A stretch of DNA of 54,867 bases, from contig NIVC01000410.1 of NCBI GenBank assembly GCA_002269645.1, positions 1 through 54,867 of the forward strand. The letters run 5' to 3'. The translations under genes and the position numbers were made by a program. The notes beneath the pieces were generated by a model. The model was given only the letters and a program-made list of their open reading frames with translations, was not told where the DNA came from and did not search any database. Source of the stretch: Macrostomum lignano (lineage: Eukaryota). Of the stretch, positions 6,732 to 42,394 are shown piece by piece; position 1 is the stretch's first letter; the number at the start of each line of letters is the position of its first letter.

Positions 6732-7317
6732 CTACAGCAGATTCGATAGCAGATCTTACAGCTAGCTTGAGAGCTCAGTAGACCTACAGCAGATTCGATA
6801 GCAGATCTTACAGCTAGCTTGAGAGCTCAGTAGACCTACAGCAGATTTGATGGCAGATCTTACAGCTAGCTTGAGAGCTCAGTAGACCTACAGCAGATTT
6901 GATGGCAGATCTTACAGCTAGCTTGAGAGCTCCGTAGACCTACAGCAGATTTGATGGCAGATCTTACAGCTAGCTTGAGAGCTCCGTAGACCTACAGCAG
7001 ATTTGATGGCAGATCTTACAGCTAGCTTGAGAGCTCAGTAGACCTACAGCAGATTTGATGGCAGATCTTACAGCTAGCTTGAGAGCTCAGTAGACCTACA
7101 GCAGATTTGATGGCAGATCTTACAGCTAGCCCGAGAGCTCAGTAGACCTACAGCAGATTTGATGGCAGATCTTACAGCTAGCTTGAGAGCTCAGTAGATC
7201 TACAGCAGATTTGATGGCAGATCTTACAGCTAGCCCGAGAGCTCAGTAGACCTACAGCAGATTTGATGGCAGATCTTACAGCTAGCCCGAGAGCTCAGTA
7301 GATCTACAGCAGATTTG
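6732..7317. repeat. 52-bp tandem repeat, ~11 copies
   Basis: TACAGCAGATTTGATGGCAGATCTTACAGCTAGCTTGAGAGCTCAGTAGACC repeated without spacers. Confidence 0.97.
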
Positions 7318-7589
7318 ACCGTAGTTATCTAAACTGCTACGAGCCCAATAGTTCTATTAAACAGAAGTATCTCCTGATACGTTAAAAGAACACTTTCGGG
7401 AAGTTTATTTTTAACGAAGTATTATTAGATTGATTCTTTATTAGTCAATAATATATCGTGGATAAAAATGTACAAAATAAATTCATACACGTTTTTGGAA
7501 CCTTATGTTTAATTAATACGAAATTTTCTGATGTGATGCATTAGCATTTTTATTGAGCAAATCACTTTTGCAAAACTACAACTGGGTTA

Positions 7590-7685
7590 GGGAGAGGCTG
7601 GAGAGAGGCTGGAGAGAGGCTGGAGAGAGGCTGGATAGAGACTGGATACAGGCGGGAGAGAGGTTGGAGAGCGGTTGGAGAGAGA
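7590..7685. repeat. 11-bp GGAGAGAGGCT repeat
   Basis: Direct inspection. Confidence 0.85.
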
Positions 7686-7963
7686 GCAGAAATGTAGTTT
7701 AGGTACTCTTTTGGGCTTTAAACACAGATAAGGTCAGAAAAAAAGAGTAAAAAGTTGCAAATATTGAGAACAATTGAATGATAAAAAAGTAAACATAAGT
7801 TCAAGTTTACTTTGTCGTTGAAGTGGCCAGACCAAACGGAGACCAAACTGAAATGACTTAGCCAAAGTCAACCGATATTCTTCAGTCGCAGTAACGCTTA
7901 AACATCAACAGGAGATCTACTTTGCCAGCTCATTCTTCAGCCCGTTTTCAACAAAGGCGGAAA

Positions 7964-10900
7964 TCAGATCCCATCGACTTTCACCAGCCTCAGCAGTTGC
8001 TGTCTCCGCCTGTTGGTCAGAGCAACCGAGAAGCAGCCTGGAGACGGTCTCCACGGCTCCGGTATCACCAGGGCCGTCGAATAGTTGTGGCCCGAACGCT
8101 CCTGACCCTTCACGACGCCTGCGAGCAGCTCACTAAGCGATCCGACCTGATGCTCTTGCAATGCTACTTCAGAAACTAGCTGATGTTGTTGTTGTTGTTG
8201 CGAAATTCCAGACGATGACACGCTGAACCAGTCAATTAACTGCCCATCGATGTAGTCCAACCTTCGACGACACAGAATCATCAGAGCCAGAAGCAGGAAG
8301 TTATCCAGTTCGCGTCGTTCCCACGGAGTCTCCACCCCGATGCCCGGCTCTGTCGCTACAGCGGACGTCGCACCAGCCGATGACGGTCCATCTCCGAGGG
8401 CGTCTACCGATCGAGACCGCTTGTAGGCTTCCTTGATCTGACGGAATGGTGAGTGCTGAACAGTGGCGGACTGTTGAGCTACTAAAGGCGGGCGGTGCAA
8501 CGCATGCTGGTGCTGTTGCGGCTGTTGCTGCTGCTGCTGTTGCTGTTGGCGCTTTTTCGATCTCGTCACCTGAAGCGGCTCATCGAGGCAGTCGATCATG
8601 GCCGTGGCGAAGCCTGTTTCGAATCGCACCTGCAATTTTTTAGTTTAATCGGTAATGAATTAAAAAAACAATAATTGCAGGAAACTTTTCAATACCCTGG
8701 CGCAACACTTGCGAAAGTCATCTCACAACCAGCGCTGACGGCATTTCTGTCCACTCCGCTGACTCCTGAGCACACGCAAGAGCGCCAATGCTGTACATGT
8801 ACCACTGGCACGCAATCTTACACGCGCTCAAACGGGGTGTACAGCGGTCCAGACATACTAATCGTCAGGAATGTACACTATCTGTGTTTTGGGGGTTCAA
8901 GCCAAGCTTCAAATTATTCAGGCCGAGCATGGAAGCCTGACAGACAGCAGCTGTGTTGTTACACAACTGTGCTGCTTTTTCTTCTAGCCGTACCGATGAT
9001 AAATAGTTTGAAAATTTCTTTTAACTTACAATTATTTTTCCTAATAATACTACGAGGGGTGATCAAAAAGTTCTGCAACCTTTTGTTATAGCTTTTAGTT
9101 ATAGAATCAGCAAAAGCCAAAAACTTACACATATGCGGCTATATCTGTTTGCTATATTTATATGCATTTTTGGCTTCCAAATGTGCTCCAGTAAAATTTC
9201 ACAGCCATATATTTTCCATGTGTTTTCAGTAGCTGATGGAAACATCAAAAGACAGTGTTCGCTTCTATATCTTTATGTGCATGCAACTTGGTTGCAAAGT
9301 GACAGAGATTCACACCATGTTTTGTGAATGTTTTAGCTGACTCTGCTCCATCATTTGACACAGTTGCCTGCTGGCTGCGCCATTTCTTGGAAGGCTGGGA
9401 CAGCTTCAACGATGAACCAAGGTCTGGCCGACCCCGGACATCCGTGACCGAAGATGTCGTGGCCCATGCCGATGCAATAATTCATGAGGATTGGAGCTTT
9501 TTGCTAAGATTCATTGCCTATGAGCTTGGTGTCAGCTATGGAAGTGCTCATAACATCATGCATGAGCAACTAGGCCGCACAAAGACCTGCGCTCGGTGGG
9601 TACCCCATCTTCTCACTCCGGAGCAGCAAGCAGAGAGGGTGCGCATCTGTCGCTTGTGGCTGCAAATGTTTGAGCCCCACGGCCCACGACAACTGTCAGA
9701 TGTCATCACAGGAGACAAATGTTGTATCTCCTTCTTTACCATGAGGGATAAGCAGTCCAACATGGTCTGGCTGGCAGAAGATGAGCCAAGGCCTGAGGTG
9801 CTGAAGACCGGATTCCGCAGTCGGAAGCGGATGTTCACCATTTTTTTCAACTCTCAGGGTGTTGTATCGGTGAACATCCTTCCAGCGGGTGCCACAGTGA
9901 CTGCCAGGTACTACACAGACACTGTTCTGCCAGGCGTGCTGCAGGAGCGGCAGGAACGTGCGCGAACCAGGCATGGACCTCGACTCCTGCTGCACCATGA
10001 CAATGCGGCACCGCACAGAGCGGCATCAACCATGGCGTACCTGGAGCAGCAGGGGGTCCGGCTGCTGCCCCATCCACCCTACTCTCTAGACCTAGCACCT
10101 TCCGACTTTTGGCTGTTCCCGAGGATCAAATCCGTCGTTTCTGGGAGGCCGTTTTCACGCATGCAAGACCTTGCCCAAGCGGTACATTCAGCTCTACAGG
10201 GTATACCAACTTTGGAGTACCATGACTGCTTTCAGACATGGTGCACACGGATGCGACGGTGCATAGATAGTGGTGGAAAGTACTTTAAGGGAATGTGACA
10301 CTGATTAGACGCCTCGGCTGCTGCAGCACAGAGTTGTGAGGTCACTTGCAGAACTTTTTGATCACCCCTCGTACTTTCTTACACACCATAGCAGTAGAGG
10401 CATAATACTAAAAAATCTATCTTAGCTAAAGTTAACACAACCCGGAAAACACAGCAGAGTAGGTACGAATAGCTCGTGCTGAAAATAAACAGAAAGAACT
10501 TGGAAGATGATTACGGAGAGAGAATGACCAAATAGTGACTCACCCGCACAGTGTCGCAGGTCAACCAGCTGCACTGCTCGCAGCCACCTTCATCGTCGCC
10601 GTTGGTTCCGCTCTCCGCGGCCGCCGCTGCTGCGCATATCTGGCACAGTTGAAGCAGACTCTGCAACAGCCAGAAAGCCTGCTTATTCGAGTATTTGCCA
10701 TTTTGCAAGGCATCCGCCAGCGAGCAAGTGTAAGCGTTATGTAAAACGCACATTCGACAGGCTTCTCTGGTTAGTGACACCAAAATCGGAGCGACAGTCC
10801 ACTCATTAGGCAGCAGCCAGCGCCTTTGCCGCCGCTGACCGAGGTACAAGCTGCAGATGCTACCAAGATGACTGTCCGGTCGAAGCACCGTTGCCGCTTG

Positions 10901-13900
10901 AAGTCCCGGCACGCAGCTGCCCCCGAAGTCTTCTCTGACCAAAGCCCGCTGACATCCCAGACGCCCGTCGTAGAGGACTTCTCCCAAATCGACTAGGCCG
11001 AAGCGTTGAGCGTTGCGCAATGCATCAGCCGTTGCCAGGCAACGCTGGGCCGCGCGCCAGGCTGCGCAAGCGCCCGGGTGATTTTTGCGAAGCAGTCGTC
11101 GAAGGCGAGTGCCGCAGCGCTGTCTTGATGCGGCCAGGCCTTGGAGACGGCGCTCGGTTTGTAGCAGTTTTGCTTCGAGATTAGCGAAGAACTTCTTCAC
11201 TACCGCAGACAGGTTGATATGCTGGTAGAAGTCCTTCGCCACCGATTCCTGCGTGAATCAAATTTGAAGATGGCTAAAGTCTTTGTTCACTAAATCTTAT
11301 TCTGTCCTTTAATTTTTGTCCTTATTTTTTGTGAAACGTCGTTCTATCTACTCTCTGAAAATTCATTGTACTCTATAAAACCTTTTTCAGTCGTCAGATT
11401 CTCTGACTATGCTCATCTTCTGACACTTTAGTCTACTATCTGATTATTAATTATATCATCTGAGATTTCATTCACTTTCTGAAACTTGATTCTATTCTTC
11501 CTCAATTTATCTTTCTTTTGACTCTTCGTTCTATCCCCAATGGCACATAATCCTGCTACATGATACAGTTAAATCTTCTGATATGTCGATATAAGTTGAT
11601 AGATCTTTCAGCAATATGAAAGGGATTGACAGGCTTAACGAAACAATAAACCTAATTGACAAACCTTCCACTCGGAGGTGCTGAAGACTGCTCCGCCACT
11701 GGCTTGACCTTTCTTGGCCACCAGTCTCCGCATCCAGGTGAAAAACTTGAAATCGCCCTCCCACTCGATGGACAGCTGATCCATCCTGGCAGCCACGCAC
11801 TGAGCCTCCTGAGTCTGCAGCCTGACCACTTCGTTCCACTGACTGTCAACGAATCCGCCAGCCTCAGTGGACTCTTTAGTCAACTGGCTCTGCATTTTGC
11901 CAATTAGCAGAGCCAGGCTGGACCTGAGATTTGCTAAGCAATCCACTAATCTTGAGGACACCTCGCTATTGAGCAGATGGAGAGCGAAATTGTGCAACTG
12001 AGTTCGGTACTGTTGTTCAACTTCGTTATTTCTAATGCGATTGTGAAGTCGGAGAGGTCCGAACTCCAGATTGCCGCATTCGGAGATGATCGACTCTTCG
12101 CAGGCCTGCGATTAGGAGTGGATTATTGATGGGATTGCAAACCTTTCTGCTGGATTAAATGGTGCCCACCTTATGTAGAGTCTGTTAACCTTAAGAACTA
12201 TAGGGGCTTTGTCTAAGTTAAGGGTGTATATCTGACCTCTCCAAGACTCGCTTACCTTCAGAAAAGGGTGTGCTCAACTCCAAAAGGGATGTTTCTGTCT
12301 TAAAATAAATATACGGTGTGTAGGCATCCGAGACAGAATATGCTATCAACAAGTCACCCCCAAAACAACGTTGTTTCATTCAACGGACAAGTCATTTACA
12401 AAACAAACCAGGTCTTAAAATCAGGAAATATCAAAAACGAATTTATTACCTGATGCAGCTTTGTTATGTCGTTCTTCAGCTTCCTCTTCAGCTGCTCGAT
12501 GGCGTCCCTCGCCTCGGACACCGCAATTCGGACCAAATCCTTGGCCGCAGGTCCTCTGGACTCCGCTTCCTCCTTAGCTGGGTCCCTAGCAAAAGCATCG
12601 AAAGCCAACGAGGCCTTGAGGAACAACAGCCCGATTGCGCCGTCGACGCCTGCACTGCTCGTCTCCAACAGGTTGGAGAACAGAGCCTCCTGCAGCTCGC
12701 CGTACTGAACTCGGTACTGCCTGTTCAGCCTGTGCACTAGACTTTTAGAGCCAGAAGCGGTAAGGGGTACACGGAGGCGAATCAAAGAAATTGGGAAGAC
12801 GCTTCGAGCTCGACCGTCGACACCGGATCGTGGATCCACCAGCCTGTAGCGCAGAAGTTGGTCATTCACCAGACGAAGTTTCCGCTGCTGAGTCTCCTCG
12901 CCGCTGCGATGCACCGAGCAGATCTCGTCGGATTGCTCATCTTCGTCGTTCGAATCTTCATCATCCGTGTTGCAGTCCATGAACTCGGCTTCTGGATCGT
13001 AGTCGACTTTGTTTACTATGTAGATGACTCGATCCTCTGGTCGATTAGCCCGAAGGAATAACAGGAATTCTCGGTCCTGGGAAGTGTTTCGTATAGAAAA
13101 AAGTTTGGATTCCAAGTATCTGAGATCCACGCAACAAAACTGGTTTTAGCGCGGTTATTTTGCCCACAGAAAACCAAGCACTATATACTATAGCACTATA
13201 ACCAAGCTTGAATTTCTTCGGATTATGCAGTAAAGGCCTCGATGAATGTCATCACCCAGCGGAAGCCAGCGGATTGCCAATATACACCTAAAGCATCAAT
13301 TTAAAATGGACAACAATCCCAGAAAACTCACCTGATTGCAAAATCCCTTCTGACTGTCGATAACGTACACCACAGTGTGATTCTTCGATCTAGCCAGCTC
13401 TCGAAGCAGCCTCTCCCTGACCAGATGATCAACGCAATCGCTAGGCACCTCCACGAAAGCCAGCTGGCACCTCATGAGCTCCATTGGTGCACCGATCTCC
13501 AGCGCGCAGCCGTCCATCGATGCCCAAGCCGACCGTTGCGGCTCGAAGTCGTCGCTAAGCAAGAAAGCTCGAACCTGGCCGGCCAACGGTCTGCTTGGGT
13601 CCAGCTCGACAGGCGGCTGGTTCGGGAACGCTGAGCCCGAGAATCGGACAAACGGCCGCTCGCTGAAGTGCAGATGCGTCAAGCCGGCCTGGCATAGCAG
13701 CAGGCTGCCAACTCCAATTGGCATGATGTCTTCTCCTAGGAGACGATTGATCAGACCGGATTTCCCGCTGGTGGGGCCGCCGAACACCAGCAGGCGCTGC
13801 TCAGCTCGAAGCGTCGCTGTCGACTCAAATTGAGCTCCGATGTCGACGTCCCCGAGTCTCCAAGGCACCGGCATCGGCATCTCGTCGGCGGAGCTCATCG

Positions 13901-14950
13901 CCAGCTGCATCTCGTCGAAGCCGTCGGCCAGTCGACGATGCGTGGCCTCGATGACGGCGCGCAGGCTGGCGTGGCGCTGAAAATCTGACTGGAATCGGCG
14001 CCGCGGCGCGATGTCAGCAGATTCGGTGTTTTCACGCTCAACGCCGGTCGAAGAAGACGCAGACTGGGGCACTGAGCATTGAATGTCGGGCAGATTGAAG
14101 GACTCGTACAACAGCGGCTGATCAATTTCGGCGGGCGTCTCGGGAACGTCTGGAGCATCAGGAAAGAGCAACTATTGGCACCGACAGTTAGATTTATTGA
14201 TAACTACATGTAGGTCACACTACCGAGATTTATCCTCCCCAACTTGTGAAGTTGGTGACAGCGCCAAAAGAGTGTAATATGGGGCGCCAATTTCAGTTTG
14301 CAAAGTGGCGCCAAAAGCAGAGTGTAATATGGGGCGCCAATTTCAGTTTGCAAAGTGGCGCCAAAAGCAGAATGTAATATGGAGCGCCAATTTCAGTTTG
14401 TAAAGTGGCGCCAAAAGCAGAATGTAATATGGGGCGCCAATTTCAGTTTGCAAAGTGGAGCCAAAAGCAGAATGTACACATGTAATATGGGGCGCCAATT
14501 TCAGTTTGCAAAGTGGCGCCAAAAACAGAGTGTAATATGAGGCGCCAAAAACAGAGTGTAATATGGGGCGCCAATTTCAGTTTGTAAAGTGGCGCCAAAA
14601 GCAGAATGTAATATGGGGCGCCAATTTCAGTTTGTAAAGTGGCGCCAAAAGCAGAATGTAATATGGGGCGCCAATTTCAGTTTGTAAAGTGGCGCCAAAA
14701 ACAGAGTGTAATATGGGGCGCCAATTTCAGTTTGCAAAGTGGCGCCAAAAGCAGAATGTAATATGGGGCGCCGATTTCAGTTTGCAAAGTGGCGCCAAAA
14801 CAGAGTGTAACTTTTCGCGCCAATTTTTTTGGAATAAACTTGAGCTAACAACTGCACTGTTGCGCTAGATTGGTTTTAATATTTATTCTAGAAAGCCAAA
14901 GCAGCATTGATAAAAGAATAATTACCTTCTCCTTCTGCAGATTCGGCCAT
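7964..14950 (-). CDS. DSTYK/RIPK5-like protein: dynamin/mitofusin-type P-loop GTPase, helical region, degenerate kinase domain (~1093 aa)
   Basis: Exons 14950-14926, 14149-13332, 13076-12450, 12105-11665, 11248-10544 and 8629-7964, all GT-AG and in phase with no frameshift. G1 GGPTSGKS, G4 VIYIVNKVD and an RSVFPIS motif are present. The C-terminal part aligns by eye to the DSTYK kinase domain (LGEVLYDGRLG...AATVLRPD...CSLADAL). The 3' end of the last exon is less certain. Confidence 0.75.
8712..8935 (-). mobile_element. Old, diverged SINE family A fragment
   Basis: Partial matches: TCTCACAACC..GACTCCTGAGCA..GTGTACAGCGGTCC..ATCGTCAGGAATGTACAC..GGGGGTT. Confidence 0.6.
9053..10371 (+). mobile_element. 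Full-length mariner (Tc1/mariner, DD34D) DNA transposon in intron 5 of the DSTYK-like gene
   Basis: Perfect 26-bp TIRs CGAGGGGTGATCAAAAAGTTCTGCAA (9053-9078 and 10346-10371), TA target duplication (9051-52, 10372-73), 1319 bp long. Confidence 0.97.
9236..10298 (+). pseudogene. Mariner transposase with a +1 frameshift near the N-terminus
   Basis: ATG at 9236 gives METSKDSVRFYIF...EIHTMF. One extra T in the run at 9320-9323 separates it from the 9324-10298 ORF. Motifs RSGRP, WVPHLL, TGD(K), HHDNA and YSLDLAPSD are present, with 34 residues between the second and third Asp. Confidence 0.9.
14259..14812. repeat. 50-bp tandem repeat, ~11 copies (intron 1 of the DSTYK-like gene)
   Basis: GTAATATGGGGCGCCAATTTCAGTTTGCAAAGTGGCGCCAAAAGCAGAGT. 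Confidence 0.95.
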
Positions 14951-15606: not shown

Positions 15607-15965
15607 TTCAGGGGAGGGTGCAGAAGAAGGTGCAAGGGAGGGTGCAGAGGAGGTTGAAGCAGAGGGTGCAAGAGGGGATGCAGGAGAGGGCGTAGGGGAG
15701 GGTGCAGAGAAGGTTGAAGCAAAGGGTGCAGGAGAGGGTGCAGGGGAGGGTGCAAAGGAGATTGAAGCAGAAGGTGCAGGAGAGGGTGCAGGAGAGGGCG
15801 TAGGGGAGGCTGCAGAGAAGGTTGAAGCAAAGGGTGCAGGAGAAGGGGCAGGGTAGGGTGCAAAGGAGGTTGAAGCAGAGGGTGCAGGAGAGGGTGCAGG
15901 AGAGGGCGTAGGGGAGGGTGCAGAGAAGGTTGAAGCAAAGGGCGCAGGGGAGGGTGCAGGGATAG
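15607..15965. repeat. ~60-bp purine-rich minisatellite built from 12-mers (AGAGGGTGCAGG)
   Basis: Direct inspection; gives the periodic HPLL ORF. Confidence 0.9.
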
Positions 15966-17694: not shown

Positions 17695-18320
17695 ATGTCT
17701 GAGCAGCTTGGTCAGCCTACTATGACGGACAGTCCAAGCAGAGAAGCGGGCAGTTCATCGCAGAGGATCACTGTGGCGTACACCAACCAGCCCTGTCGGA
17801 GAAAACTGCAATTCATCAACGGCAAGTTCGCCGTGCAGAAGCCGCAGACCAGCACCGTGCAGAAGCGCAACGAACGGGAACGGAACCGGGTGAAGCTCAT
17901 CAACCGAACTTTTGCAACGCTGCGCGACCGACTGCCGAAACGATACAACGGCAAGAAGGCTAGAAAGTTGAGCAAAGTTGAAGTGCTCAAAACTGCTTCT
18001 ACTTACATAGCCTATCTTGTTAAGCTTCTGGAATCCGATAGTGCTGCTGAGGTTGGCGAGTTCAGCTTTGATCAAGTTCAACAGCGGGCTCAACCATCAA
18101 ACATGACGGCTGCTCGACCAGTTGTCGAGTCTTCATCTGGGATGTGCGACCTCTCCGATCTGCTTTTAAGCGACGAAGACGACGGGACAGCTGCTGGTGC
18201 AACAGCAGCAGCAACAGCAGCAGCTTCATTGTCCGTCGATAATATTGACGATTCTGCTCTGCTTCAGTTTTCAACCGAAGGGATTGATATCTCAAGTGTC
18301 AGCTGTTCACCTAACGAAGT

Positions 18321-18359
<39 letters not shown>

Positions 18360-18585
18360 CGATCCGCAACATCAGATTCATTTCTCAAGTGCCTACACTA
18401 CCGACTGCTTCAATATGTCCACTCCGATAAAGCCAGTGACTCAATGCCAGCAAGAGCTGCCTACCACCGCGGCCGGTCCGTCGTATTACCTGGTTGCTCC
18501 GGAGTTCGTCACGACTGGTGGTCAGTTCACCTGCGGCGGTGCATCGCAGGTGCATCTGCTTTCAATTAGCGGTGAGCTATATTGA
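17695..18585 (+). CDS. ascl: Achaete-scute family proneural bHLH transcription factor (intronless, 296 aa)
   Basis: KRNERERNRVKLINRTFATLRDRLP...KLSKVEVLKTASTYIAYL matches the ASCL bHLH domain. A (CAG)12 polyQ tract lies at 18322-18357. Confidence 0.93.
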
Positions 18586-18635
18586 TTTAATCTTAGATTA
18601 TTGCATGCAGTGACAGCTGGAATTCTAACTGGAGT

Positions 18636-19002
18636 GATTTTTTCAATAGAGGCAGGGGCTGTGTGTATCATGATGCTCTTTAAGCGACATTGTCACACAA
18701 CCGGCGAGAGGCATTACTGCCTATCCGCCGACTCCCCTGAGCAGGCACACAAGCGCGTGAATACGTACGCAGTCATACGCACTGGCACACACTCACACAC
18801 AAGTGTACAGCGGCCCTAACTTTATTTATCGTCAGGCATGTACACTTCACTGTGCCTTGGGGGTTGGTCCTCAAGCTGGGCGTTAATTGCACGAGCAGAG
18901 CCAAGCCGAGATACCAATTTAAGCCCCAAATTATGCGACTGCACTTGGAATCGAGCCTGGGCCGCTGGCACATGAGAGTGCCGCGCCAGACCACTGGGCT
19001 AC
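18636..19002 (-). mobile_element. SINE family A, near full length, just 3' of the achaete-scute stop
   Basis: The reverse complement matches the head (GTAGCCCAGTGG...GGCTCGATTCCAAGTGCAGTC), body and tail of the 24754 copy. Confidence 0.85.
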
Positions 19003-19014
19003 AAATTTGTAACT

Positions 19015-19112
19015 AGTGAATCAATGATTCAATGAATCACTGAATCAGTGAGTCAGTGAGTCAGTGAGTCAGTGAGTCAGTGAGTCAGTGAGTCAGCGAA
19101 TCAGTGAGTGAC
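19015..19112. repeat. 8-bp (TGAGTCAG)n array
   Basis: Six perfect TGAGTCA at 19049-19095. Confidence 0.9.
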
Positions 19113-19844
19113 CTTTTTAGTGATTTAGGGAATCAATGATTCGTTGAGTATGTGTCTTAGCTAATCGGTGAATCTAAATGACATGACTTATTTTGCGAAT
19201 AAAAGATGACAAAAAACGATCACATTCTTTCTCATCAACTTTCACCTTCCAGATCCATTGGGAAACACTGCAGGATACCTTCAGTATCTCTAGCCAGTGC
19301 GATTGCTGCAAAGACCTGCTGTGATCGAGTCCTTAAGGGCTGAGAGACATAATGGTTGCCAAGTTTTAATTATGTCACACGTATTTAAGCTTTTAATTCC
19401 ATACAGCTAATTATAACAATTGTATCCGTCAATTGTTTCCTTTTTTGTTTTAATTTTCCCCGGAAAAGAATAAATTTATCTGTTATTTAACAATATCGCC
19501 ATGACTTGCTGTTCTCAGCAATTGCGTTTATAGTTTTGTACTATATTCATACTACATTTAAGTTGTTATTGGCTGCAAAGGGATTTTTAATACATTTCCT
19601 TTGTTATTTAATAATTTCATGTAGTAGTTTGTGATAGATTAACCGGTTTCGCGTTCACAATGCCTACATGATTAACACTTTTGTTTGTTTTAACATCCCG
19701 TAGTTTATTGTCCTTCTGTTATTTAACAAATGGCATTGCATTCGACTGCTAAATTAAATAAACAAATTTCAGAAATTGTGATCTGTGTGTAAATTATTAA
19801 AATTTGTAGCGACTTTTACGTACTTCTTTTCAGTCTGCTAAAAT

Positions 19845-22296: not shown

Positions 22297-25200
22297 ATGC
22301 AGGATGTAAAAATCAATAGCTCCAATGATTCACAACAGCGCAATTTTCAATACTTGGCAGGAAAAGCCACATGTCTGACGCAAAATAAAGAATTCAAGGA
22401 TTATCTTATGAAATGGTAAGTTTTTCTGACGGAGATCGAGATCATACTAGATTATAACTGTGTTTAATGTTCTAAGCATCAGGCGCGTGGCCACGATTCG
22501 TGTCAGGAGGGGGACAGAAACATAAATTTATCTCCAATGGAACCGATGCAAGCAAAATATAGGCCTAAAGGCAGTAAAAAAGTTTTCACCCTTCAGGGGA
22601 CATGTCTCCAGTGTGCCCCCCTTGGCTACGCCCCTGCTAAGCATATAGGCTTCTTTTTTAAATTTCAGTGAGCCTAAATTCACTTTTTAGTCTAAACTTA
22701 AGTGAATAATTAGGTAAATTTGGATTGGTTTATGTCATCAAGTCCAATTAAACAATTAAGCCAAAATATTTATATTATGTTTTTCTTATATTTTTGATAT
22801 TAAAATAACTTGGATACATAAAGTATTAACTGTATCGAAGTTTTTATGCTACTACAGTATAGTAATAGCATATTAGTTCCTTTTATCTTATTTAGGATTC
22901 ACTGACCTTTGTATATAAAATAAAAATATTAGGCCTATTTATTGATTTCTAGGCCTATAACTATACATCTATAATAAGCCCAAGAAGGCATTTAAAATTT
23001 ATTCAAATATTTCTGATTGCATTTGTAAATCCTTAGTAAAGTCTATCTAAGAATTCCATATAAACTATAATGATTACTTTTAATTCTCTTATAGTAATAA
23101 AGAAATAGAGTTCTTCTAAATTTTTAATGTTTAATTCCAATTGCACATTTTAAAAACTTCAGGTCCATGAAAGGCCGAATATTCTGCCAGTGCTTCTCCT
23201 TTGACTGCCAGTTCAAGGTCCATTCAGCCCAGGAGTTTATTGAGGACTTTTTTAAAGACAATGTTATTGTGTCTAACCTGCAGACAGTGTCAGATAATAC
23301 TGGAGAGCTTGTTGCACTGTGTGAGTCAGCCATATTTTTGTCTATCTGTTTTAATTTTCTATCAAGCCAGGTATTTAATTTTAAACTATTTCTTTACACC
23401 AAAGATTTGTAAAGTAAAAAAGTATCGACTTTTTGGATTTTTTAGCATTTTCAAAAAAAATTTCTAGAATTTTTTAAAGGATTTTAACATTTATAATTTA
23501 GTATACAGGTGTATATTTAGAAGCCTTTTATAATGTATTATATTTGAGATTCTTATTTATTATTTTTAAGACTCTAGCTGGGATCTTTGCTCTAGTCTAG
23601 GATCTTTAAGATTCTAATATAGAATCCTAAATGAGACTCTAATCTGGGATCTTTGAGATTCTAAAATAGGATTTTCAAATTGCGATTCTAATCTGGGATA
23701 TTTGAGATTCTAATTTAGGATCTTCAAATTGAGATTCTAATCTGTAATATTTGAGATTCTAATCTGGAATCTTTGAGATTCTAATCTGACGATCTTTGAG
23801 ATTCTAATCTGGGATATTTGTGATTCTAATCTGATGATCTTTGAGATTCTAATCTGGGGATCTTTGAGATTCTAATCTGGGATCTTCGAGATTCTAATCT
23901 GACGATCTTTGAGATTCTAATCTGACGATCTTTGAGATTCTAATCTGGGACCCTTGAGATTCTAGACAGTCACAGAGCTTTCAAAAAACCACAAAAAATC
24001 TTGGAAGGCGAAAAAGCGTCGAGCGTGTCCCTGGAGCCGGTGCCCTGCACGCACACCACCATGGACCTGTTTGGCCGACTCGCCGATGAAGTCATTCGCG
24101 ACGACGGCCAAATCAAGCGATGTTTCGACGAATGGATCGACGAAGTGCAGATTTCGGACAACCTGCGACAGGTGGGTTCGCTTATTACTTATATGTTTTC
24201 GATTTTCAAATTAAAAAATATTTTAATTTTCAGTGCACTTTACTACTCGCGTACTTGTCAGTAGTATTGTTAGGACATGTGTATTCAGAGCAGAGCAGAC
24301 CAAAAATGCATAAAATTTATGGAGGTCTCAATTAACGATTTATTCTCCCTGAAGCCAGCGAAAATGAACCGTCATTAAGATTTACCGGTTTAGCTGGCCC
24401 CTTAAACATGCCACTCTACCAAAAATGTACATCTGCCCGACTTTCTCATCCGATTGACCCTTGTTTTTTATTATTAAAGGCAGGAGGCTGTGCGACATTG
24501 TCACACACAACCGGCTTGCGGATACATACGCAGTCATACGCACAGGCACACACTCACACAGAAGTGTACAGCGGCCCTAACTTTATTTTATCGTTAGGCA
24601 TGTACACTTCACTGTGCCTTGGGGGTTGGCCTTCAAGGCCGTTAATTTCACGAGCAGAGCCAAGCCGAGATTGACTCTCGTTGGCTGGTTGGGTGAAGAA
24701 TTCCGCGAAGCACATTAAAGTATTTTTAGACGCATTTCTATCGATCAAGTGTAGGGGGGCCGTAGCCCAGCGGTAGCGCAGCTGCTCTGGTGTGCCAGCG
24801 ACCCAGGCTCGATTCCAAGTGCAGTCACATTAATTTGGGGCTGAATTGGAATCTCGGCTTGGCTCTGCTCGTGCAATTAACGGCCTTGAGAGCCAACCCC
24901 CCAAGGCGCAGTGAAGTGTACATGCCTAACGATAATATAAAGTTAGGGCCGCTGTACACTCCTGCGTGAGTGTGTGCCTGCGTACGTATCCGCGCGCTTG
25001 TATGCCTGCTCAGGGGAGTCGGCGGAATGGGCAGTAATGCCTCTCGCCGGTTGTGTGCCAATGTCGCTTAAAGTGCGCCAGGGTGCACACAACCCCCCTG
25101 CCTCTGATAAAAAAAAATCGATCATGTGTGCTTATGGTAAAACTTCGAAAAAAAAATATTTACGGGCATATATCTCTTTAGTAAAATTTGCACAAGGTTT

Positions 25201-35825: not shown

Positions 35826-36164
35826 TTCACTTTTGGAGGGGGTTGCTTGCTGTCTTGGGAATATTTTCTATTTAGGGAAACGATATTTTGTTGACTGTTT
35901 GTTAATTTTAGAGAAAATGTGATTTTTTAATTTTGCAAACATCTTAGTCCGTGACAATTTTACACGAATAAGGTGATTTTTAAAATGTGAAGAAGGAATT
36001 AGTGTTTAAGAAAATGTGTTTTGTTATTGTTTTCCATGAACTATTTTTGCTCCTTTCTTATTGGGCGCCCCGAAGGGGGGCCGCACTAGATTGCTAGTCC
36101 TGTCTATAAGTGCGATTGAGGATAAAATTATTGGGTTTAAAATAGGCTGGAAATGTACTTTTTA

Positions 36165-37322
36165 AAGGAGAAGGCAGAAGAGAGAGAATTTAAGACAGCA
36201 TAGTAATGGAGAGAAGAGAGGAAATGAGAGAAGCGAAGAGAGAGATGAGAAAAATGGGAAGAGGAGAGGAGAGGAGAGGAGAGACAGGAAAGGGGAGAGA
36301 GGGGAGGAGAGAAAAGAGGAGAGAGAATGGGGAGAGGAGAGGAGAGAGAATGGGGAGAAAAGAGGAGAGAGAATGGGGAGAGGAGAGGAGAGAGAATGGG
36401 GAGAGGAGAGGAGAGAGAATGGGGAGAAAAGAGGAGAGAGAATGGGGAGAGAAGAGGAGAGAGAATGGGGAGAGAAGAGGAGAGAGAATGGGGAGAAAAG
36501 AGGAGAGAGAATGGGGAGAAAAGAGGAGAGAGAATGGGGAGAGGAGAGGAGAGAGAATGGGGAGAGGAGAGGAGAGAGAATGGGGAGAAAAGAGGAGAGA
36601 GAATGGGGAGAGGAGAGGAGAGAGAATGGGGAGAGTAGAGGAGAGAGAATGGGGAGAGGAGAGGAGAGAGAATGGGGAGAGTAGAGGAGAGAGAATGGGG
36701 AGAGTAGAGGAGAGAGAATGGGGAGAGGAGAGGAGAGAGAATGGGGAGAGTAGAGGAGAGAGAATGGGGAGAGGAGAGGAGAGAGAATGGGGAGAGGAGA
36801 GGAGAGAGAATGGGGAGAGGAGAGGAGAGAGAATGGGGAGAGGAGAGGAGAGAGAATGGGGAGAAAAGAGGAGAGAGAATGGGGAGAAAAGAGGAGAGAG
36901 AATGGGGAGAAAAGAGGAGAGAGAATGGGGAGAGGAGAGGAGAGAGAATGGGGAGAGGAGAGGAGAGAGAATGGGGAGAGGAGAGGAGAGAGAATGGGGA
37001 GAGGAGAGGAGAGAGAATGGGGAGAAAAGAGGAGAGAGAATGGGGAGAAAAGAGGAGAGAGAATGGGGAGAAAAGAGGAGAGAGAATGGGGAGAAAAGAG
37101 GAGAGAGAATGGGGAGAGGAGAGGAGAGAGAATGGGGAGAAAAGAGGAGAGAGAATGGGGAGAGGAGAGGAGAGAGAATGGGGAGAGGAGAGGAGAGAGA
37201 ATGGGGAGAAAAGAGGAGAGAGAATGGGGAGAAAAGAGGAGAGAGAATGGGGAGAAAAGAGGAGAGAGAATGGGGAGAAAAGAGGAGAGAGAATGGGGAG
37301 AGGAGAGGAGAGAGAGAAGAGA
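36165..37322. repeat. 23-bp purine minisatellite GGAGAGAGAATGGGGAGAGGAGA, ~43 copies
   Basis: Direct inspection. Confidence 0.97.
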
Positions 37323-37789
37323 AGAAAGATCCATTTTGAACAGACGTGGTAAAATCTACGTGTACTTTAAATATTGAAAAAAAGTTATACTCGTACTTCA
37401 GTGATTAAGCGTTAAAAAGTCTCCCATTTAAAAGAATTTAAAAGTCACCCAGACATTCTACAAAACACAAGCTGCAGATAACAGAAAGCAGAAAAAAAAT
37501 TCTGGATTCAATTCGCTTCATTTAAATTGCGCCGCAAAGAGTGGCGCTTTTCCAGTTGGCATTAAATTATTAAAATCGACAAGATCGTGCTTAGAATTAA
37601 AATATCTTCTCTCACAAAAATGGCTTAGACGTGATAAAAAGACTGATGTTTTTGTCAAGAAACAAATCTCAAGGGAATCTGCGATTGAGTCCAATTTCTT
37701 CGTCTGCTAACATGGAAAACTTAGTACTTTCGGCGCTACTTTGAGTACAAGCGGGCGCTATTTTTCTTACTAAAGGTACCACTTTCGAG

Positions 37790-40700
37790 TTACGAGAGGT
37801 GCCAATTTGAGGTTACTAGAAGCGCCACTTTAAGGTTACTAGAAGCGCCAGTTTGAGGTTACTAGAAGCGCCAGTTTGAGGTTACTAGAAGCGCCAGTTT
37901 GAGGTTACTAGAAGCGCCACTTTAAGTTTACTAGAAGCGCCAATTTGAGGTTACTAGAAGCGCCAGTTTGAGGTTACTAGAAGCGCCAGTTTGAGGTTAC
38001 TAGAAGCGCCACTTTGAGGTTACTAGAAGCGCCACTTTGAGGTTACTAGAAGCGCCACTTTGAGGTTACTAGAAGCGCCACTTTGAGGTTACTAGAAGCG
38101 CCACTTTGAGGTTACTAGAAGCGCCACTTTAAGGTTACTGGAAGCGCCACTTTGAGATTACTAGAAGCGCCAGTTTGAGGTTACTAGAAGCGCCAGTTTG
38201 AGGTTACTAGAAGCGCCACTTTAAGTTTACTAAAAGCGCCAATTTGAGGTTACTAGAAGCGCCACTTTAAGGTTACTAGAAGCGCCAGTTTAAGTTTACT
38301 AGAAGCGCCACTTTGAGGTTACTAGAAGCGCCAATTTGAGGTTACTAGAAGCGCCACTTTGAGGTTACTAGAAGCGCCAGTTTGAGGTTACTAGAAGCGC
38401 CACTTTGAGATTACTAGAAGCGCCACTTTAAGTTTACTAGAAGCGCCAGTTTGAGGTTACTGGAAGCGCCACTTTAAGGTTACTAGAAGCGCCACTTTAA
38501 GGTTACTAGAAGCGCCACTTTATGGTTACTAGAAGCGCCACTTTGAGGTTACTAGAAGCGCCAGTTTGAGGTTACTAGAAACGCCACTTTGAGGTTACTA
38601 GAAGCGCCACTTTGAGGTTACTAGAAGCGCCAGTTTGAGGTTACTAGAAGCGCCACTTTGAGGTTACTGGAAGCGCCACTTTGAGGTTACTAGAAGCACC
38701 ACTTTGAGGTTACTAGAAGCGCCACTTTGAGGTTACTAGAAGCACCACTTTGAGATTACTAGAAGCGCCACTTTGACGTTACTGGAAGCGCCACTTTGAG
38801 GTTACTAGAAGCACCACTTTGAGGTTACTAGAAGCGCCACTTTAAGTTTACTAGAAGCGCCACTTTGAGGTTACTAGAAGCACCACTTTGAGGTTACTGG
38901 AAGCGCCACTTTGAGGTTACTAGAAGCGCCACTTTGAGGTTACTAGAAGCGCCACTTTAAGTTTACTAAAAGCGCCACTTTGAGGTTACTAGAAGCGCCA
39001 GTTTGAGGTTATTGGAAGCGCCACTTTAAGGTTACTAGAAGCGCCACTTTAAGGTTACTAGAAGCGCCACTTTATGGTTACTAGAAGCGCCAGTTTGAGG
39101 TTACTAGAAGCGCCAGTTTAAGGTTACTAGAAGCGCCATTTTAAGGTTACTAGAAGCGCCACTTTGAGGTTACTAGAAGCGCCACTTTGAGGTTACTAGA
39201 AGCGCCAGTTTGAGGTTACTAGAAGCGCCACTTTGAGGTTACTAGAAGCGCCAGTTTGAGGTTACTAGAAGCGCCAGTTTGAGGTTACTAGAAGCGCCAG
39301 TTTGAGGTTACTAGAAGCGCCAATTTGAGGTTACTAGAAGCGCCAGTTTGAGGTTAATAGAAGCGCCAGTTTGAGGTTACTAGAAGCACCACTTTGAGGT
39401 TACTAGAAGCACCACTTTGAGGTTACTAGAAGCGCCACTTTAAAGTTACTGGAAGCGCCACTTTAAGTTTACTAGAAGCGCCACTTTAAGTTTACTAGAA
39501 GCGCCAGTTTGAGGTTACTAGAAGCGCCACTTTAAGTTTACTAGAAGCGCCAGTTTGAGGTTACTAGAAGCGCCACTTTAAGTTTACTAGAAGCGCCAGT
39601 TTGAGGTTACTAGAAGCGCCACTTTAAGTTTACTAGAAGCGCCAGTTTGAGGTTACTAGAAGCGCCACTTTAAGTTTACTAGAAGCGCCAGTTTGAGGTT
39701 ACTAGAAGCGCCAGTTTGAGGTTACTAGAAGCACCACTTTGAGGTTACTAGAAGCGCCACTTTGAGGTTACTAGAAGCTCCACTTTAAGGTTACTAGAAG
39801 CGCCAGTTTGAGGTTACTAGAAGCGCCAGTTTAAGGTTACTAGAAGCGCCACTTTAAGGTTACTAGAAGCGCCACTTTATGGTTACTAGAAGCGCCACTT
39901 TGAGGTTACTAGAAGCGCCAGTTTGAGGTTACTAGAAGCGCCAGTTTAAGGTTACTAGAAGCGCCATTTTAAGGTTACTAGAAGCGCCACTTTGAGGTTA
40001 CTAGAAGCGCCACTTTAAGGTTACTGGAAGCGCCACTTTAAGTTTACTAGAAGCGCCACTTTAAGTTTACTAGAAGCGCCAGTTTGAGGTTACTAGAAGC
40101 GCCACTTTAAGTTTACTAGAAGCGCCAGTTTGAGGTTACTAGAAGCGCCACTTTAAGTTTACTAGAAGCGCCACTTTGAGGTTACTAGAAGCGCCACTTT
40201 AAGGTTACTGGAAGCGCCACTTTAAGTTTACTAGAAGCGCCACTTTAAGTTTACTAGAAGCGCCAGTTTGAGGTTACTAGAAGCGCCACTTTAAGTTTAC
40301 TAGAAGCGCCAGTTTGAGGTTACTAGAAGCGCCACTTTAAGTTTACTAGAAGCGCCAGTTTGAGGTTACTAGAAGCGCCACTTTAAGTTTACTAGAAGCG
40401 CCAGTTTGAGGTTACTAGAAGCGCCACTTTAAGTTTACTAGAAGCGCCAGTTTGAGGTTACTAGAAGCGCCAGTTTGAGGTTACTAGAAGCGCCACTTTG
40501 AGGTTACTAGAAGCGCCACTTTGAGGTTACTAGAAGCTCCACTTTAAGGTTACTAGAAGCGCCAGTTTGAGGTTACTAGAAGCGCCAGTTTAAGGTTACT
40601 AGAAGCGCCACTTTAAGGTTACTAGAAGCGCCACTTTATGGTTACTAGAAGCGCCACTTTGAGGTTACTAGAAGCGCCAGTTTGAGGTTACTAGAAGCGC

Positions 40701-41525: not shown

Positions 41526-42394
41526 CTTGCTATCTTTCTAATAACCATAGAAAATTTTACTGCAGTCAAGGAAAGAAGCTCACCTGAATTTGACTTCTTA
41601 TCCTTCGAGTTGTATTTCGACTAGGAACTTTTCCGTGTTTCACTTTACTTACTTATACAGTGGGCCCGTGTCCACTGAAGTGGACTGCTGCAATCGGAAC
41701 TAGTATTTAAGGGGAAGGTTTGGGAGTTTGACCAGAACCTCCAATAGCCTCGCCATTGGGCCTTAGAAGCAAAGGGAGATTTCTCTGTCATTGGGGAAGA
41801 GGTTGTGTCAGCCCGCACATCCCATTTCTGTCCTGGAGAGGCAGTTCTGGAGGGATTTGGGAAAGAAAACTTGACCTCCTGGCTAGATGAAAACAGCTGG
41901 GATGCATGAATGTCAGAAAAAAATGAAAAGATTTTCCAATAGGAGAACTGTAATTTGTAGGGCCTTAAAATCTGCAATAATCTGCTTCAAGCTGCTAAAA
42001 GTCATCATTTGAGATCGACAGTCGATCATCTTTGCTTGTAGAATTCTTTAAATACGTGACTTCGTGTGAATTGCTTGACATAGTCCAGACATAACAAGAG
42101 CACAAAATGATTGAGCTGTGAAGTGCACTTGGGGACACGGAGGGACACTGAGGGAAGATAAAAAGATCAGATATAGAATTTCAAAGAAACGAAGGTCAAA
42201 GAGAAATCGCTAGAAAGTGGATGAGATGTGCAAAGGCTGCAGAGAGAGAAAGAGGGGGGCAGAGTGGGAAGGAAGTGTGAGAGAGAGGAGAAGGGTAGAG
42301 ACAGAAAAGATAGTTATGCAGATGGTAGAAGAGAGAGGGAGAGACAGAAAAGGAGAGGGGTGTGGGATAGGGACAGATGTTGAGATAGGGAGAA

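What the first reader, a model, noticed from the sequence alone, without database searches (positions are those of the whole stretch)
7964..14950. DSTYK-like fusion with apparently inverted catalysis: GTPase motifs kept, kinase dead
Seen: the N-terminal domain keeps a canonical G1 (G-GPTS-GKS) and G4 (NKVD), while G3 is altered (EVPS for DxPG). The kinase-like C-terminus lacks the VAIK lysine (QAATV), HRD/catalytic loop (CSWLTCDTV) and DFG (IDCL). Six exons are intact and in phase, so the gene looks maintained. Established, from memory: vertebrate DSTYK has an active kinase and a degenerate P-loop. Inference: this is a dynamin-like GTPase plus pseudokinase module, possibly a membrane-remodelling or immune-type sensor in which the kinase fold is only a scaffold.
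Basis: partly seen in the sequence, partly recalled or inferred. Interest (0 to 1): 0.8.

Follow-up and report, generated by a model that had tools for sequence, protein, structure and literature searches.

The report
Flatworm DSTYK-like dynamin–pseudokinase fusion gene
This is a real, spliced gene of the flatworm Macrostomum lignano that joins a mitofusin/bacterial-dynamin-type GTP-binding module to a worn-out kinase-like tail; it is a divergent relative of the human disease gene DSTYK, and comparing the two shows that the two halves of this protein family have lost their catalytic residues in opposite lineages.

Summary
Six GT-AG exons on the minus strand (7964-14950) encode 1093 aa, identical to the annotated M. 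lignano protein PAA83706.1.

The N-terminal 700 aa are a BDLP/mitofusin-type dynamin-like module (Foldseek to BDLP, E 1e-15). The closest relatives outside Macrostomum are invertebrate "DSTYK-like" Dynamin_N+kinase proteins. Nematostella DSTYK aligns end to end with human DSTYK (E 4e-33), so "DSTYK-like" is right.

The interpretation needs two corrections.
- The G domain is only half kept. G1 and G4 are intact. The switch-I Thr (Q here) and the G3 DxxG (EVPS here), both near-invariant in the family, are lost.
- "GTPase kept, kinase degenerate" is the rule in invertebrate DSTYK-likes: only 1 of 32 has a DFG Asp. It is not special to this gene. One Saccoglossus protein keeps both sets; vertebrates kept only the kinase.

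The C-terminus has no β3 Lys, αC Glu, HRD Asp or catalytic Asn. Its kinase fold rests on family collinearity and an AlphaFold model whose top 50 PDB matches are all kinases (E ≥1e-4). Sequence-only tests are weak.

Three near-identical gene copies show pN/pS of 0.13-0.25. This is most likely a nucleotide-binding scaffold with both catalytic centres degenerate.

The parts
7964..14950 (-). Whole gene Mlig014929g3 (start codon at 14950-14948, stop codon at 7966-7964): 6 exons, 1093 aa
   Evidence: Splice model. Identical to PAA83706.1. Annotated range on NIVC01000410.1.
14926..14950 (-). Exon 1 (aa 1-8, ends in phase 1)
13332..14149 (-). Exon 2 (aa 9-281): N-terminal helix and the first part of the G domain, with G1, the G2 equivalent and G3
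12450..13076 (-). Exon 3 (aa 282-490): end of the G domain with G4 NKVD, an acidic insert, and the first long helices
11665..12105 (-). Exon 4 (aa 491-637): helical bundle, including the aromatic/basic stretch FKFFTWMRRLVAKK (aa 609-622)
10544..11248 (-). Exon 5 (aa 638-872): family signature EWKESVAKDF, last bundle helices, and the kinase-like N-lobe through the catalytic-loop remnant
7964..8629 (-). Exon 6 (aa 873-1093 plus stop): β7/β8-like strands, IDCL, a poly-Q/low-complexity insert, a poorly modelled C-lobe and the tail
13758..13781 (-). G1/P-loop GGPTSGKS (aa 132-139), canonical GxxxxGK[ST]
13683..13697 (-). G2/switch-I equivalent LCQAG (aa 160-164). The family 'PCT' Thr is replaced by Gln and there is a 3-residue insertion.
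   Evidence: The MFN1 T109 register comes from the alignment.
13440..13451 (-). G3/switch-II equivalent EVPS (aa 242-245) in place of the family motif D[AST]PG
13002..13013 (-). G4 NKVD (aa 303-306), the guanine-specificity motif, intact
11003..12764 (-). Helical bundle region (aa 386-719; spans introns 3 and 4), BDLP/mitofusin-like neck and trunk
   Evidence: AF2 helices 394-720. Foldseek to BDLP 2j69, E 1e-15 over 753 columns.
8231..11002 (-). Kinase-like (pseudokinase) region, aa 720-1005; spans intron 5
   Evidence: Secondary-structure order β1-β3/αC/β4-β5/αD/αE/β7-β8. The Foldseek top 50 are all kinases. hhalign P 0.002.
10547..10573 (-). Catalytic-loop remnant CSWLTCDTV (aa 863-871). The paralogue has WSLTPKNLK against the family DLKPKNVL.
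8585..8596 (-). IDCL (aa 884-887), at the DFG position after the β8-like strand. D885 is conserved in the paralogue (YDYL).
8507..8548 (-). Poly-Q tract (aa 900-913) inside a roughly 85-aa low-confidence insert at the activation-segment position
8048..8062 (-). Site of the 1-nt difference: GTGGAGACC here against GTGGGAGACC in both other copies. It shifts the frame of the last 28 residues.

Best explanation
The gene encodes a lineage-specific, strongly diverged member of the metazoan DSTYK-like family. This family is a fusion of a BDLP/mitofusin-type dynamin-like module (G domain plus two helical bundles) with a C-terminal protein-kinase domain.

Shown:
- the gene structure;
- the dynamin-like fold and its homology to DSTYK-likes through the G domain, the bundles and the 'EWK..VAK' linker;
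- the states of all catalytic motifs;
- three conserved genomic copies and two further paralogue groups in M. lignano.

Inferred:
- With an intact P-loop and NKxD, the G domain probably still binds guanine nucleotide.
- Without the switch-I Thr and the DxxG Asp and Gly, it probably hydrolyses slowly or not at all and does not switch in the canonical way.
- The C-terminal domain keeps a kinase-like core (N-lobe, αD/αE, β7-β8) but none of the β3 Lys, αC Glu, HRD Asp or catalytic Asn. It cannot transfer phosphate and serves as a binding or regulatory surface.

The protein would therefore act as a nucleotide-loaded, possibly membrane-associated scaffold rather than as an enzyme. By analogy with vertebrate DSTYK on late endosomes and lysosomes, the likeliest place of action is endolysosomal membrane dynamics.
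For: Gene model and identity to the annotated, transcriptome-derived protein.

Dynamin-like module: Dynamin_N E 6e-6; BDLP E 1e-5 over aa 59-379; AF2 pLDDT 75-92 over most of aa 52-720; Foldseek to BDLP E 1e-15 over 753 columns, then IniA and MFN1/2.

Family placement:
- Only 35 hits in 1.84e9 representative proteins. The best hits outside Macrostomum are Nematostella, hemichordate and nemertean DSTYK(-like) proteins, covering aa 125-656.
- 33/35 hits have Dynamin_N and 13/35 have Pkinase.
- Nematostella DSTYK aligns with human DSTYK collinearly from 56-891 to 99-890, E 4e-33.
- In an NJ tree the three Macrostomum groups are monophyletic (100%) within or at the base of the metazoan clade (81%).

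Motif states.

Constraint: the C-terminus is 30% identical to paralogue Mlig003289 over 282 aa, E 3e-25. Three copies have pN/pS of 0.13-0.25; there were 9 nonsynonymous against 18 synonymous changes, binomial p 3e-6.

Kinase-like fold: the secondary-structure order fits; all 50 best PDB matches of the C-terminal model are kinases, best E 1e-4; hhalign gives a collinear match with P 0.002.

DSTYK biology: late-endosome/lysosome localisation, and overexpression enlarges or fuses these organelles (PMC6981171).
Against: Sequence-only evidence for a kinase domain is weak. Pfam finds no hit at E<=10. The family-kinase HMM scores 1.3 bits, a value reached by 30 of 2000 shuffles, and the paralogue is not significant. 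A PDB profile search finds no kinase.

The AlphaFold alignments contained recognisable kinase domains, so the kinase-like model is not independent of them. Only about 170-220 residues match, at TM 0.25-0.4, and the C-lobe is below pLDDT 50.

Dynamin_N scores 26.8 bits, just under the gathering score of 27.

With G2 and G3 altered, even nucleotide binding is unproven.

This particular copy carries a 3' frameshift relative to its sister copies and a new transposon in intron 5, so it may be the least functional of the three.

I examined no expression or localisation data for this gene; nothing was found. The endolysosomal role is borrowed from a vertebrate protein that shares no direct significant similarity with this one (E 0.17).
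Confidence: 0.6

Rival explanations
1. The G domain is a working GTPase despite its unusual G2 and G3, and the protein is an active membrane-remodelling dynamin-like enzyme whose pseudokinase is a passive appendage. This is essentially the first reader's reading. A nearby Thr (T165 in 'GLTHL') or Ser, together with Glu242, would take over the roles of the canonical residues.
For: G1 and G4 are canonical. The whole BDLP-like architecture is preserved and confidently modelled. Purifying selection acts on the G domain (pN/pS 0.11-0.32). Both diverged paralogues keep E at the G3 Asp position, which suggests a conserved and possibly functional substitution.
Against: The family conserves T (29/32), D (31/32) and G (28/32) at exactly the positions changed here. 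T165 is not conserved in the paralogue (IVH). In MFN1 the equivalent T109 lies at the same register from 'LP', and from established knowledge T109A abolishes GTPase activity.
Confidence: 0.2
2. The C-terminal 370 residues are not kinase-derived. The ancestral kinase domain was lost or replaced in the Macrostomum lineage by an unrelated, partly disordered region, and the kinase-like model is an artefact of aligning it to kinases.
For: There is no Pfam kinase hit at E<=10. hmmsearch is not significant for the paralogue and marginal for this protein. The PDB profile search finds nothing. More than half of aa 887-1093 has pLDDT below 50. The MAFFT alignments of the C-lobe disagree with each other.
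Against: The region sits exactly where relatives have their kinase domain, right after the conserved EWK..VAK linker. Its secondary-structure order is that of a kinase N-lobe plus αD/αE/β7-β8, with pLDDT up to about 90 in those elements. All 50 top structural matches are kinases. The paralogue keeps 'LTPKNLK' against the family 'LKPKNVL', and 'CVLHSAY..SL' at the hinge. hhalign gives a collinear match with P 0.002.
Confidence: 0.15
3. The family is a lineage-expanded innate-immunity-type sensor or effector, analogous to IRG/GBP/GIMAP GTPases, in which the pseudokinase acts as a decoy or recognition surface.
For: There are multiple lineage-specific paralogues in hemichordates, corals and Macrostomum. 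The kinase-like domain diverges rapidly and has variable catalytic residues.
Against: No immune-related domain, expression pattern or genomic clustering was seen. The window holds only one copy. The copies in M. lignano are explained by its known genome duplication (PMC5730564). The one functional study of a family member points to lysosome biogenesis.
Confidence: 0.05

Closest known systems
Invertebrate 'DSTYK-like' proteins (for example Nematostella vectensis XP_032222785, Glandiceps/Saccoglossus/Ptychodera DSTYK-like, Tubulanus and Lineus proteins)
   Same: Same collinear architecture: N-terminal helix, dynamin-like G domain, acidic insert after G4, long helical bundles, EWK..VAK linker and a C-terminal kinase-type domain. 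Significant similarity over aa 125-656 (E 3e-18 to 1e-10). Most of them also lack the DFG Asp.
   Different: They still score as Pkinase or PK_Tyr_Ser-Thr in Pfam and keep G2 Thr and G3 DxPG. The Macrostomum proteins have lost both and also lack the β3 Lys, HRD Asp and catalytic Asn. This protein carries poly-Q and low-complexity inserts and is longer (1093 aa against about 850-960 aa).
Vertebrate DSTYK (human, 929 aa; SPG23 and CAKUT gene)
   Same: Homologous through intermediates. Nematostella and human DSTYK align end to end at E 4e-33. The P-loop stretch and the EWK..VA linker of this protein line up with the human sequence.
   Different: The pattern is opposite. Human DSTYK has an active-looking kinase (K681, HRD D777, N782, DLG D795; Pkinase 126 bits). 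Its G domain has lost the P-loop GK[ST] signature (only the Lys remains), G2, G3 and G4, and Pfam finds no Dynamin_N. Direct similarity to this protein is not significant (E 0.17). Human DSTYK groups with Saccoglossus P0062, not with the Macrostomum clade.
BDLP (Nostoc punctiforme, PDB 2J68/2J69), IniA and mitofusins MFN1/2 (fusion-type dynamin-like proteins)
   Same: These are the best sequence and structure matches of the N-terminal 700 aa: the G domain followed by helical bundles.
   Different: They have no kinase-type domain, their G2 and G3 are canonical, and mitofusins have transmembrane anchors. No transmembrane segment is evident here.
ROCO proteins (LRRK1/2): a GTPase and a kinase on one polypeptide
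   Same: Functional analogy only: a G domain and a kinase-fold domain in one chain, with membrane and endolysosomal biology.
   Different: The G domain is unrelated (Roc/Ras-like, not dynamin-like), the order and accessory domains differ, and both centres are active in LRRK2.

Membership tests
Dynamin superfamily, BDLP/mitofusin-type DLP | Large G domain recognised by the Dynamin_N profile | tested here: inconclusive
   26.8 bits against a gathering score of 27, E 6e-6, with only aa 129-156 aligned. Paralogue P0003 scores 35.4 bits over the full profile, and relatives score 46-80 bits.
Dynamin superfamily, BDLP/mitofusin-type DLP | G1 P-loop GxxxxGK[ST] and G4 [NT]KxD | tested here: met
   GGPTSGKS at aa 132-139 and NKVD at aa 303-306.
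Dynamin superfamily, BDLP/mitofusin-type DLP | G2 switch-I Thr and G3 DxxG | tested here: not met
   Gln replaces the family Thr (29/32). EVPS replaces D[AST]PG (D 31/32, G 28/32).
Dynamin superfamily, BDLP/mitofusin-type DLP | G domain followed by helical bundles, with a fold match to solved DLPs | tested here: met
   AF2 pTM 0.66. Foldseek to BDLP E 1e-15 over 753 columns, then IniA, MFN1/2, SynDLP, OPA1 and dynamin.
Dynamin superfamily, BDLP/mitofusin-type DLP | GTP binding, stimulated hydrolysis and membrane binding or remodelling | not testable with these tools
   Needs biochemistry.
DSTYK / DSTYK-like family | Significant full-length-type similarity to named DSTYK(-like) proteins beyond the G domain | tested here: met
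   Nematostella DSTYK E 3e-18 over aa 125-656 and Glandiceps DSTYK-like E 4e-15 over aa 123-648. The link to human DSTYK is only transitive.
DSTYK / DSTYK-like family | C-terminal protein kinase domain detectable by profile | tested here: not met
   No Pkinase or PK_Tyr_Ser-Thr hit at E<=10 for the whole protein or for the C-terminal fragments. The family HMM gives p about 0.015.
DSTYK / DSTYK-like family | Orthology to vertebrate DSTYK | tested here: not met
   In an NJ tree on 537 columns, the Macrostomum groups form their own clade (100%) and human DSTYK pairs with Saccoglossus P0062. This is a simple distance tree, so it is indicative only.
Pseudokinase (protein-kinase-like fold without catalytic residues) | Bilobal protein-kinase fold | tested here: inconclusive
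   For the C-terminal AF2 model, all top-50 PDB matches are kinases, but with E 1e-4 to 3e-3, TM 0.25-0.4, 165-225 columns and an unmodelled C-lobe. The alignment used for the model contained kinases.
Pseudokinase (protein-kinase-like fold without catalytic residues) | Loss of at least one of β3 Lys, HRD Asp or DFG Asp | tested here: met
   There is no Lys in aa 700-821. The catalytic-loop remnant is WLTCDTV, with no Asp or Asn at the aligned positions. Only a possible DFG-position Asp (D885) remains.

The most novel reading that the evidence does not exclude
The DSTYK family began as a fusion of a bacterial-type or mitofusin-type membrane-fusion dynamin with an active kinase. That state is still visible in one Saccoglossus protein that has both motif sets intact. 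The family then became a natural experiment in reciprocal pseudo-enzyme evolution. Vertebrates silenced the GTPase. Most cnidarian, hemichordate and nemertean copies disabled the kinase. The Macrostomum clade, including this gene, disabled both, leaving a nucleotide-binding double pseudoenzyme that works purely as a scaffold on endolysosomal membranes. If so, the unexplained lysosome-fusion phenotype of vertebrate DSTYK would stem from its unrecognised dead-dynamin half.
Probability: 0.3. Interest if true: 0.7.

Novelty: new variant of a known kind. Interest (0 to 1): 0.55.

Why it matters
DSTYK is a human disease gene (spastic paraplegia SPG23, urinary-tract malformations, scoliosis-like defects in zebrafish), and its mechanism is poorly understood. 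The papers I could search treat it as a kinase with an uncharacterised N-terminus. None of the DSTYK papers found with 'dynamin' or 'GTPase' describes a dynamin-like domain.

This flatworm gene and its relatives show that the N-terminal two thirds of the family are a BDLP/mitofusin-type module. That fits the reported late-endosome/lysosome localisation and fusion phenotype (PMC6981171).

They also show that the two catalytic centres have been kept or lost in different combinations in different lineages. This gives concrete, testable predictions:
- which relatives should bind or hydrolyse GTP;
- which should phosphorylate;
- that scaffold functions must be shared by all of them.

M. lignano has transgenesis and RNAi, so the doubly degenerate form is experimentally accessible.

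For this gene alone the result is more modest: it is an uncharacterised, lineage-specific, doubly degenerate member of the family.

Tried and rejected
The exhaustive phmmer search solved this.
- The last word-indexed search, with amphioxus DSTYK-like P0064, returned only P0064, so no vertebrate DSTYK came from searches. The exact-sequence look-up confirmed it as KAI2521105.1, and only then did I use it.
- Global hhalign of the Macrostomum C-termini against the family kinase domains was uninformative. Local mode gave a weak collinear match.
- hmmsearch with the family kinase HMM against this protein, the paralogues and 4000 shuffles gave marginal or non-significant scores.
- A PDB profile search with the two Macrostomum C-termini found no kinase.
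- Peng et al. 2006, the original 'Dusty' paper, is not held.
- There is no mention of Mlig014929 in the searchable literature or in the genome paper's held supplements, so I obtained no expression data.
- I considered and rejected a decaying pseudogene as the main reading. The ORF is intact, three copies are under purifying selection, and the paralogue conserves the C-terminus.
- I considered a missed exon carrying Lys, HRD or DFG. The annotated transcript-derived protein equals my model, the two other copies have the same exon structure, and the only large extra intron content is a mariner element.

Full report
**What is there.** The window is the complete 54,867-bp contig NIVC01000410.1 of the Macrostomum lignano assembly GCA_002269645.1. 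On the minus strand, six exons with GT-AG borders join into a 3282-nt ORF of 1093 aa. The exons are 14950-14926, 14149-13332, 13076-12450, 12105-11665, 11248-10544 and 8629-7964. The product is identical over its full length to NCBI PAA83706.1, 'hypothetical protein BOX15_Mlig014929g3'. That annotation derives from a genome-guided transcriptome assembly (PMC5730564), so the splice model has indirect transcript support. I did not inspect reads.

**N-terminal two thirds.** Pfam gives only a near-threshold Dynamin_N hit (26.8 bits, gathering score 27). The best solved-structure sequence match is the cyanobacterial dynamin-like protein BDLP over aa 59-379 (E 1e-5), followed by weak mitofusin P-loop matches. 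An AlphaFold2 model built on a 38-sequence family alignment has pTM 0.66. It is confident over aa 52-720: a Rossmann-like G domain followed by very long helices. Foldseek against the PDB puts BDLP first (E 1e-15, 753 aligned columns), then IniA, MFN1/MFN2, SynDLP, DynA-type pairs, OPA1/Mgm1, Drp1 and dynamin. This part is therefore a fusion-type dynamin-like module.

**Relatives.** An exhaustive phmmer search of 1.84 billion cluster representatives found only 35 proteins at E<=1e-3. The best are two further M. lignano paralogue groups: Mlig003289 (1076 aa, 38% identity, E 2e-129) and Mlig031520. Next come proteins of 850-1190 aa from Nematostella, hemichordates and nemerteans. [quoted passage not shown] Their matches run from the P-loop far into the helical region (aa 125-656).

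- Of the 35 hits, 33 carry Dynamin_N and 13 carry Pkinase. The typical layout is Dynamin_N at ~70-240 and a kinase domain at ~640-900.
- A profile search added anthozoan, nemertean and amphioxus members.
- Human DSTYK did not appear in any search. I entered its sequence from memory, and the exact look-up confirmed it.
- Nematostella DSTYK aligns with human DSTYK collinearly from the P-loop to the end of the kinase domain (E 4e-33).
- This flatworm protein matches human DSTYK only at the P-loop stretch (E 0.17) and at the EWK..VA linker.
- A neighbour-joining tree on 537 columns groups the three Macrostomum lineages together (100% bootstrap). It places them within or at the base of the metazoan DSTYK-like clade (81%). 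Human DSTYK is sister to a Saccoglossus protein.

'DSTYK-like' is therefore justified as family membership in the broad sense, not as orthology.

**Motif states across the family.** The table covers 32 invertebrate members outside Macrostomum.

| Site | Conserved in |
|---|---|
| G1 Lys | 32/32 |
| G2 Thr (in 'PCT') | 29/32 |
| G3 Asp | 31/32 |
| G3 Gly | 28/32 |
| β3 Lys | 20/32 (Arg in 10) |
| HRD Asp | 24/32 |
| Catalytic Asn | 24/32 |
| DFG Asp | 1/32 |

- The 'PCT' Thr lies seven residues after the 'LP' proline, the same register as MFN1 T109 in the alignment.
- G4 is [NS]KxD almost throughout.
- Most members read 'KINxxK' where human DSTYK reads 'KITDLGFCK'.
- The one protein with a DFG Asp, Saccoglossus P0062, has both motif sets intact: GQTNSGKSS and DSPG, plus K, HRD, N, DLG and APE.
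- Human DSTYK is the mirror image. It reads GQDCNVKCQ, has Lys at G2, VAPC at G3 and no G4, yet has a 126-bit Pkinase match.

The 'inverted' pattern, however, is the general condition of invertebrate DSTYK-likes, not a feature of this gene.

**This protein's G domain.** G1 (GGPTSGKS) and G4 (NKVD) are canonical. G2 is Gln, with a 3-residue insertion (LCQAG). G3 is EVPS. The paralogue Mlig003289 has PCN and EIPG. Within its family this is the most degenerate G domain apart from the vertebrate one. From established knowledge of Ras-like and dynamin-like GTPases, the switch-I Thr and the DxxG Gly sense the γ-phosphate, and the Asp and Thr hold Mg2+. I therefore infer nucleotide binding with impaired or atypical hydrolysis and switching. 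This is inference, not measurement.

**This protein's C-terminus.** Pfam finds no kinase at E<=10, either in the whole protein or in fragments. An HMM of the family's kinase domains scores 1.3 bits on this C-terminus, a value reached by 30 of 2000 shuffles, and is not significant on the paralogue. A profile of the two Macrostomum C-termini finds no kinase in the PDB. Local hhalign against the family kinase alignment gives a collinear match over about 240 columns with P 0.002 but probability 15%.

Several observations favour a kinase origin.

- The region follows the conserved EWK..VAK linker exactly where relatives have their kinase.
- The paralogue retains 'WSLTPKNLK' against the family 'DLKPKNVL'. 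Both retain 'CVLH.AY..SL.D' at the hinge/αD position and an αE-like helix.
- Both AlphaFold models give the order β1-β2-β3, αC, β4-β5, αD, αE, β7-β8. pLDDT reaches about 90 in the N-lobe strands and αD/αE in the C-terminal model, but is below 50 for most of aa 887-1093.
- All 50 best PDB matches of the C-terminal model are protein kinases (PINK1, CDK8, BRAF, CDK12, JAK, MET, CSK). E is 1e-4 to 3e-3 over 165-225 columns, with TM 0.25-0.4.

The alignments given to AlphaFold contained recognisable kinases, so this is supportive rather than independent evidence.

Whatever the exact register, there is no Lys in aa 700-821 and no Glu in the αC-like helix. The catalytic-loop remnant WLTCDTV has neither the Asp nor the Asn at the aligned positions. 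D885 in 'IDCL' follows the β8-like strand and is conserved as YDYL in the paralogue, so it may be a relic of the DFG Asp. An insert of about 85 residues containing a poly-Q tract sits at the activation-segment position.

**Is the gene maintained?**

- The C-terminal region is 30% identical to the paralogue's over 282 aa (E 3e-25).
- The assembly holds three copies (g1, g2, g3) with 99% identical coding sequence and 97-98% identity across the whole gene, introns included.
- Nei-Gojobori pN/pS is 0.13-0.25 overall. In the window-versus-g1 comparison there are 9 nonsynonymous and 18 synonymous changes where 3.2:1 is expected (binomial p 3e-6).
- pN/pS is 0.3-0.4, on very few changes, in the C-terminal third.
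- This copy differs from both others by one G in a G-run (window ~8053). That replaces the shared 44-residue tail (...PEPWETVSRLLLG...NELAK) with 28 other residues. The ancestral tail is still open in another frame (ORF 7917-8054). Copy g2 has a similar 1-nt loss in a C-run near its 5' end. Homopolymer assembly errors are therefore as likely as real mutations.

**Mechanism proposed.** The protein is a nucleotide-binding but catalytically impaired dynamin-like scaffold with a pseudokinase interaction domain. In vertebrates, DSTYK localises to late endosomes and lysosomes, and its overexpression enlarges or fuses them (PMC6981171). That behaviour suits a BDLP/mitofusin-derived protein, so I place the most likely action of the flatworm protein on endolysosomal membranes. 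This last step is analogy only. The rivals are set out in their own sections: an active GTPase with compensating residues, a non-kinase C-terminus, and an immune-type expanded family.

**Novelty.** The gene is annotated only as hypothetical, and I found no paper mentioning it. Among the DSTYK papers retrieved with 'dynamin', 'GTPase', 'pseudokinase' or 'N-terminal', none describes a dynamin-like N-terminus or the reciprocal motif losses. Automated database annotations do show Dynamin_N on the invertebrate proteins. I rate the gene a new variant of a known kind. The more interesting result is the family-level pattern.

Noticed in passing
window 9051-10373 (+), inside intron 5: This is a mariner/Tc1-type DNA transposon. 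It has perfect 28-nt terminal inverted repeats, a TA target-site duplication and a 324-aa ORF (9324-10298) that hits Transposase_1 and HTH_32. The two other genomic copies of the gene have the empty site (...AATAC TA CTTTC...), so the insertion is recent and specific to this copy.
   Followed up: yes
window ~8053 (CDS position ~3193); also L002 near the CDS start: There are 1-nt length differences in short homopolymers between the three gene copies. Here the run is GG against GGG, which changes the last 28 residues. In copy g2 it is CC against CCC or CTC, which makes its annotated protein start at Met89. These are either real frameshifts or long-read assembly errors.
   Followed up: partly
window 14269-14810 (intron 1); also 7000-7318, 7592-7684 and 15614-15961: There are tandem repeat arrays. 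A 50-bp unit repeated about 11 times fills most of intron 1, and its copy number differs between the three gene copies. A 52-bp unit repeated 6 times and an 11-bp unit repeated 8.5 times lie just downstream of the gene. A 108/48-bp G-rich array lies upstream.
   Followed up: partly
window ~17695-19293 and ~22297-24950 (from L003 coordinates): The neighbouring annotated genes are an HLH-domain protein (301 aa) and a CFAP300-domain protein. In the sister locus L002 a wnt gene lies downstream of copy g2.
   Followed up: no
window 36001-38000, 42001-44000 and 46001-48000: There are strong compositional anomalies: GC skew +0.67 and +0.49 with AT skew +0.42 and +0.30, and a 2-kb block of 65% GC. Long overlapping ORFs on both strands at 36.1-37.4 kb and 46.5-47.7 kb suggest low-complexity or repeat sequence.
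   Followed up: no
P0062 (Saccoglossus kowalevskii DSTYK-like, 881 aa), not in the window: This is the only family member examined that has both a complete set of G motifs and a complete set of kinase catalytic residues (K, HRD, N, DLG, APE). It groups with human DSTYK and is a candidate for the ancestral state of the family.
   Followed up: partly
aa 609-622 (window 11710-11751): The aromatic/basic stretch FKFFTWMRRLVAKK lies in a low-confidence tip of the helical bundle. Its position resembles that of the membrane-binding paddle of BDLP. I did not analyse this further.
   Followed up: no
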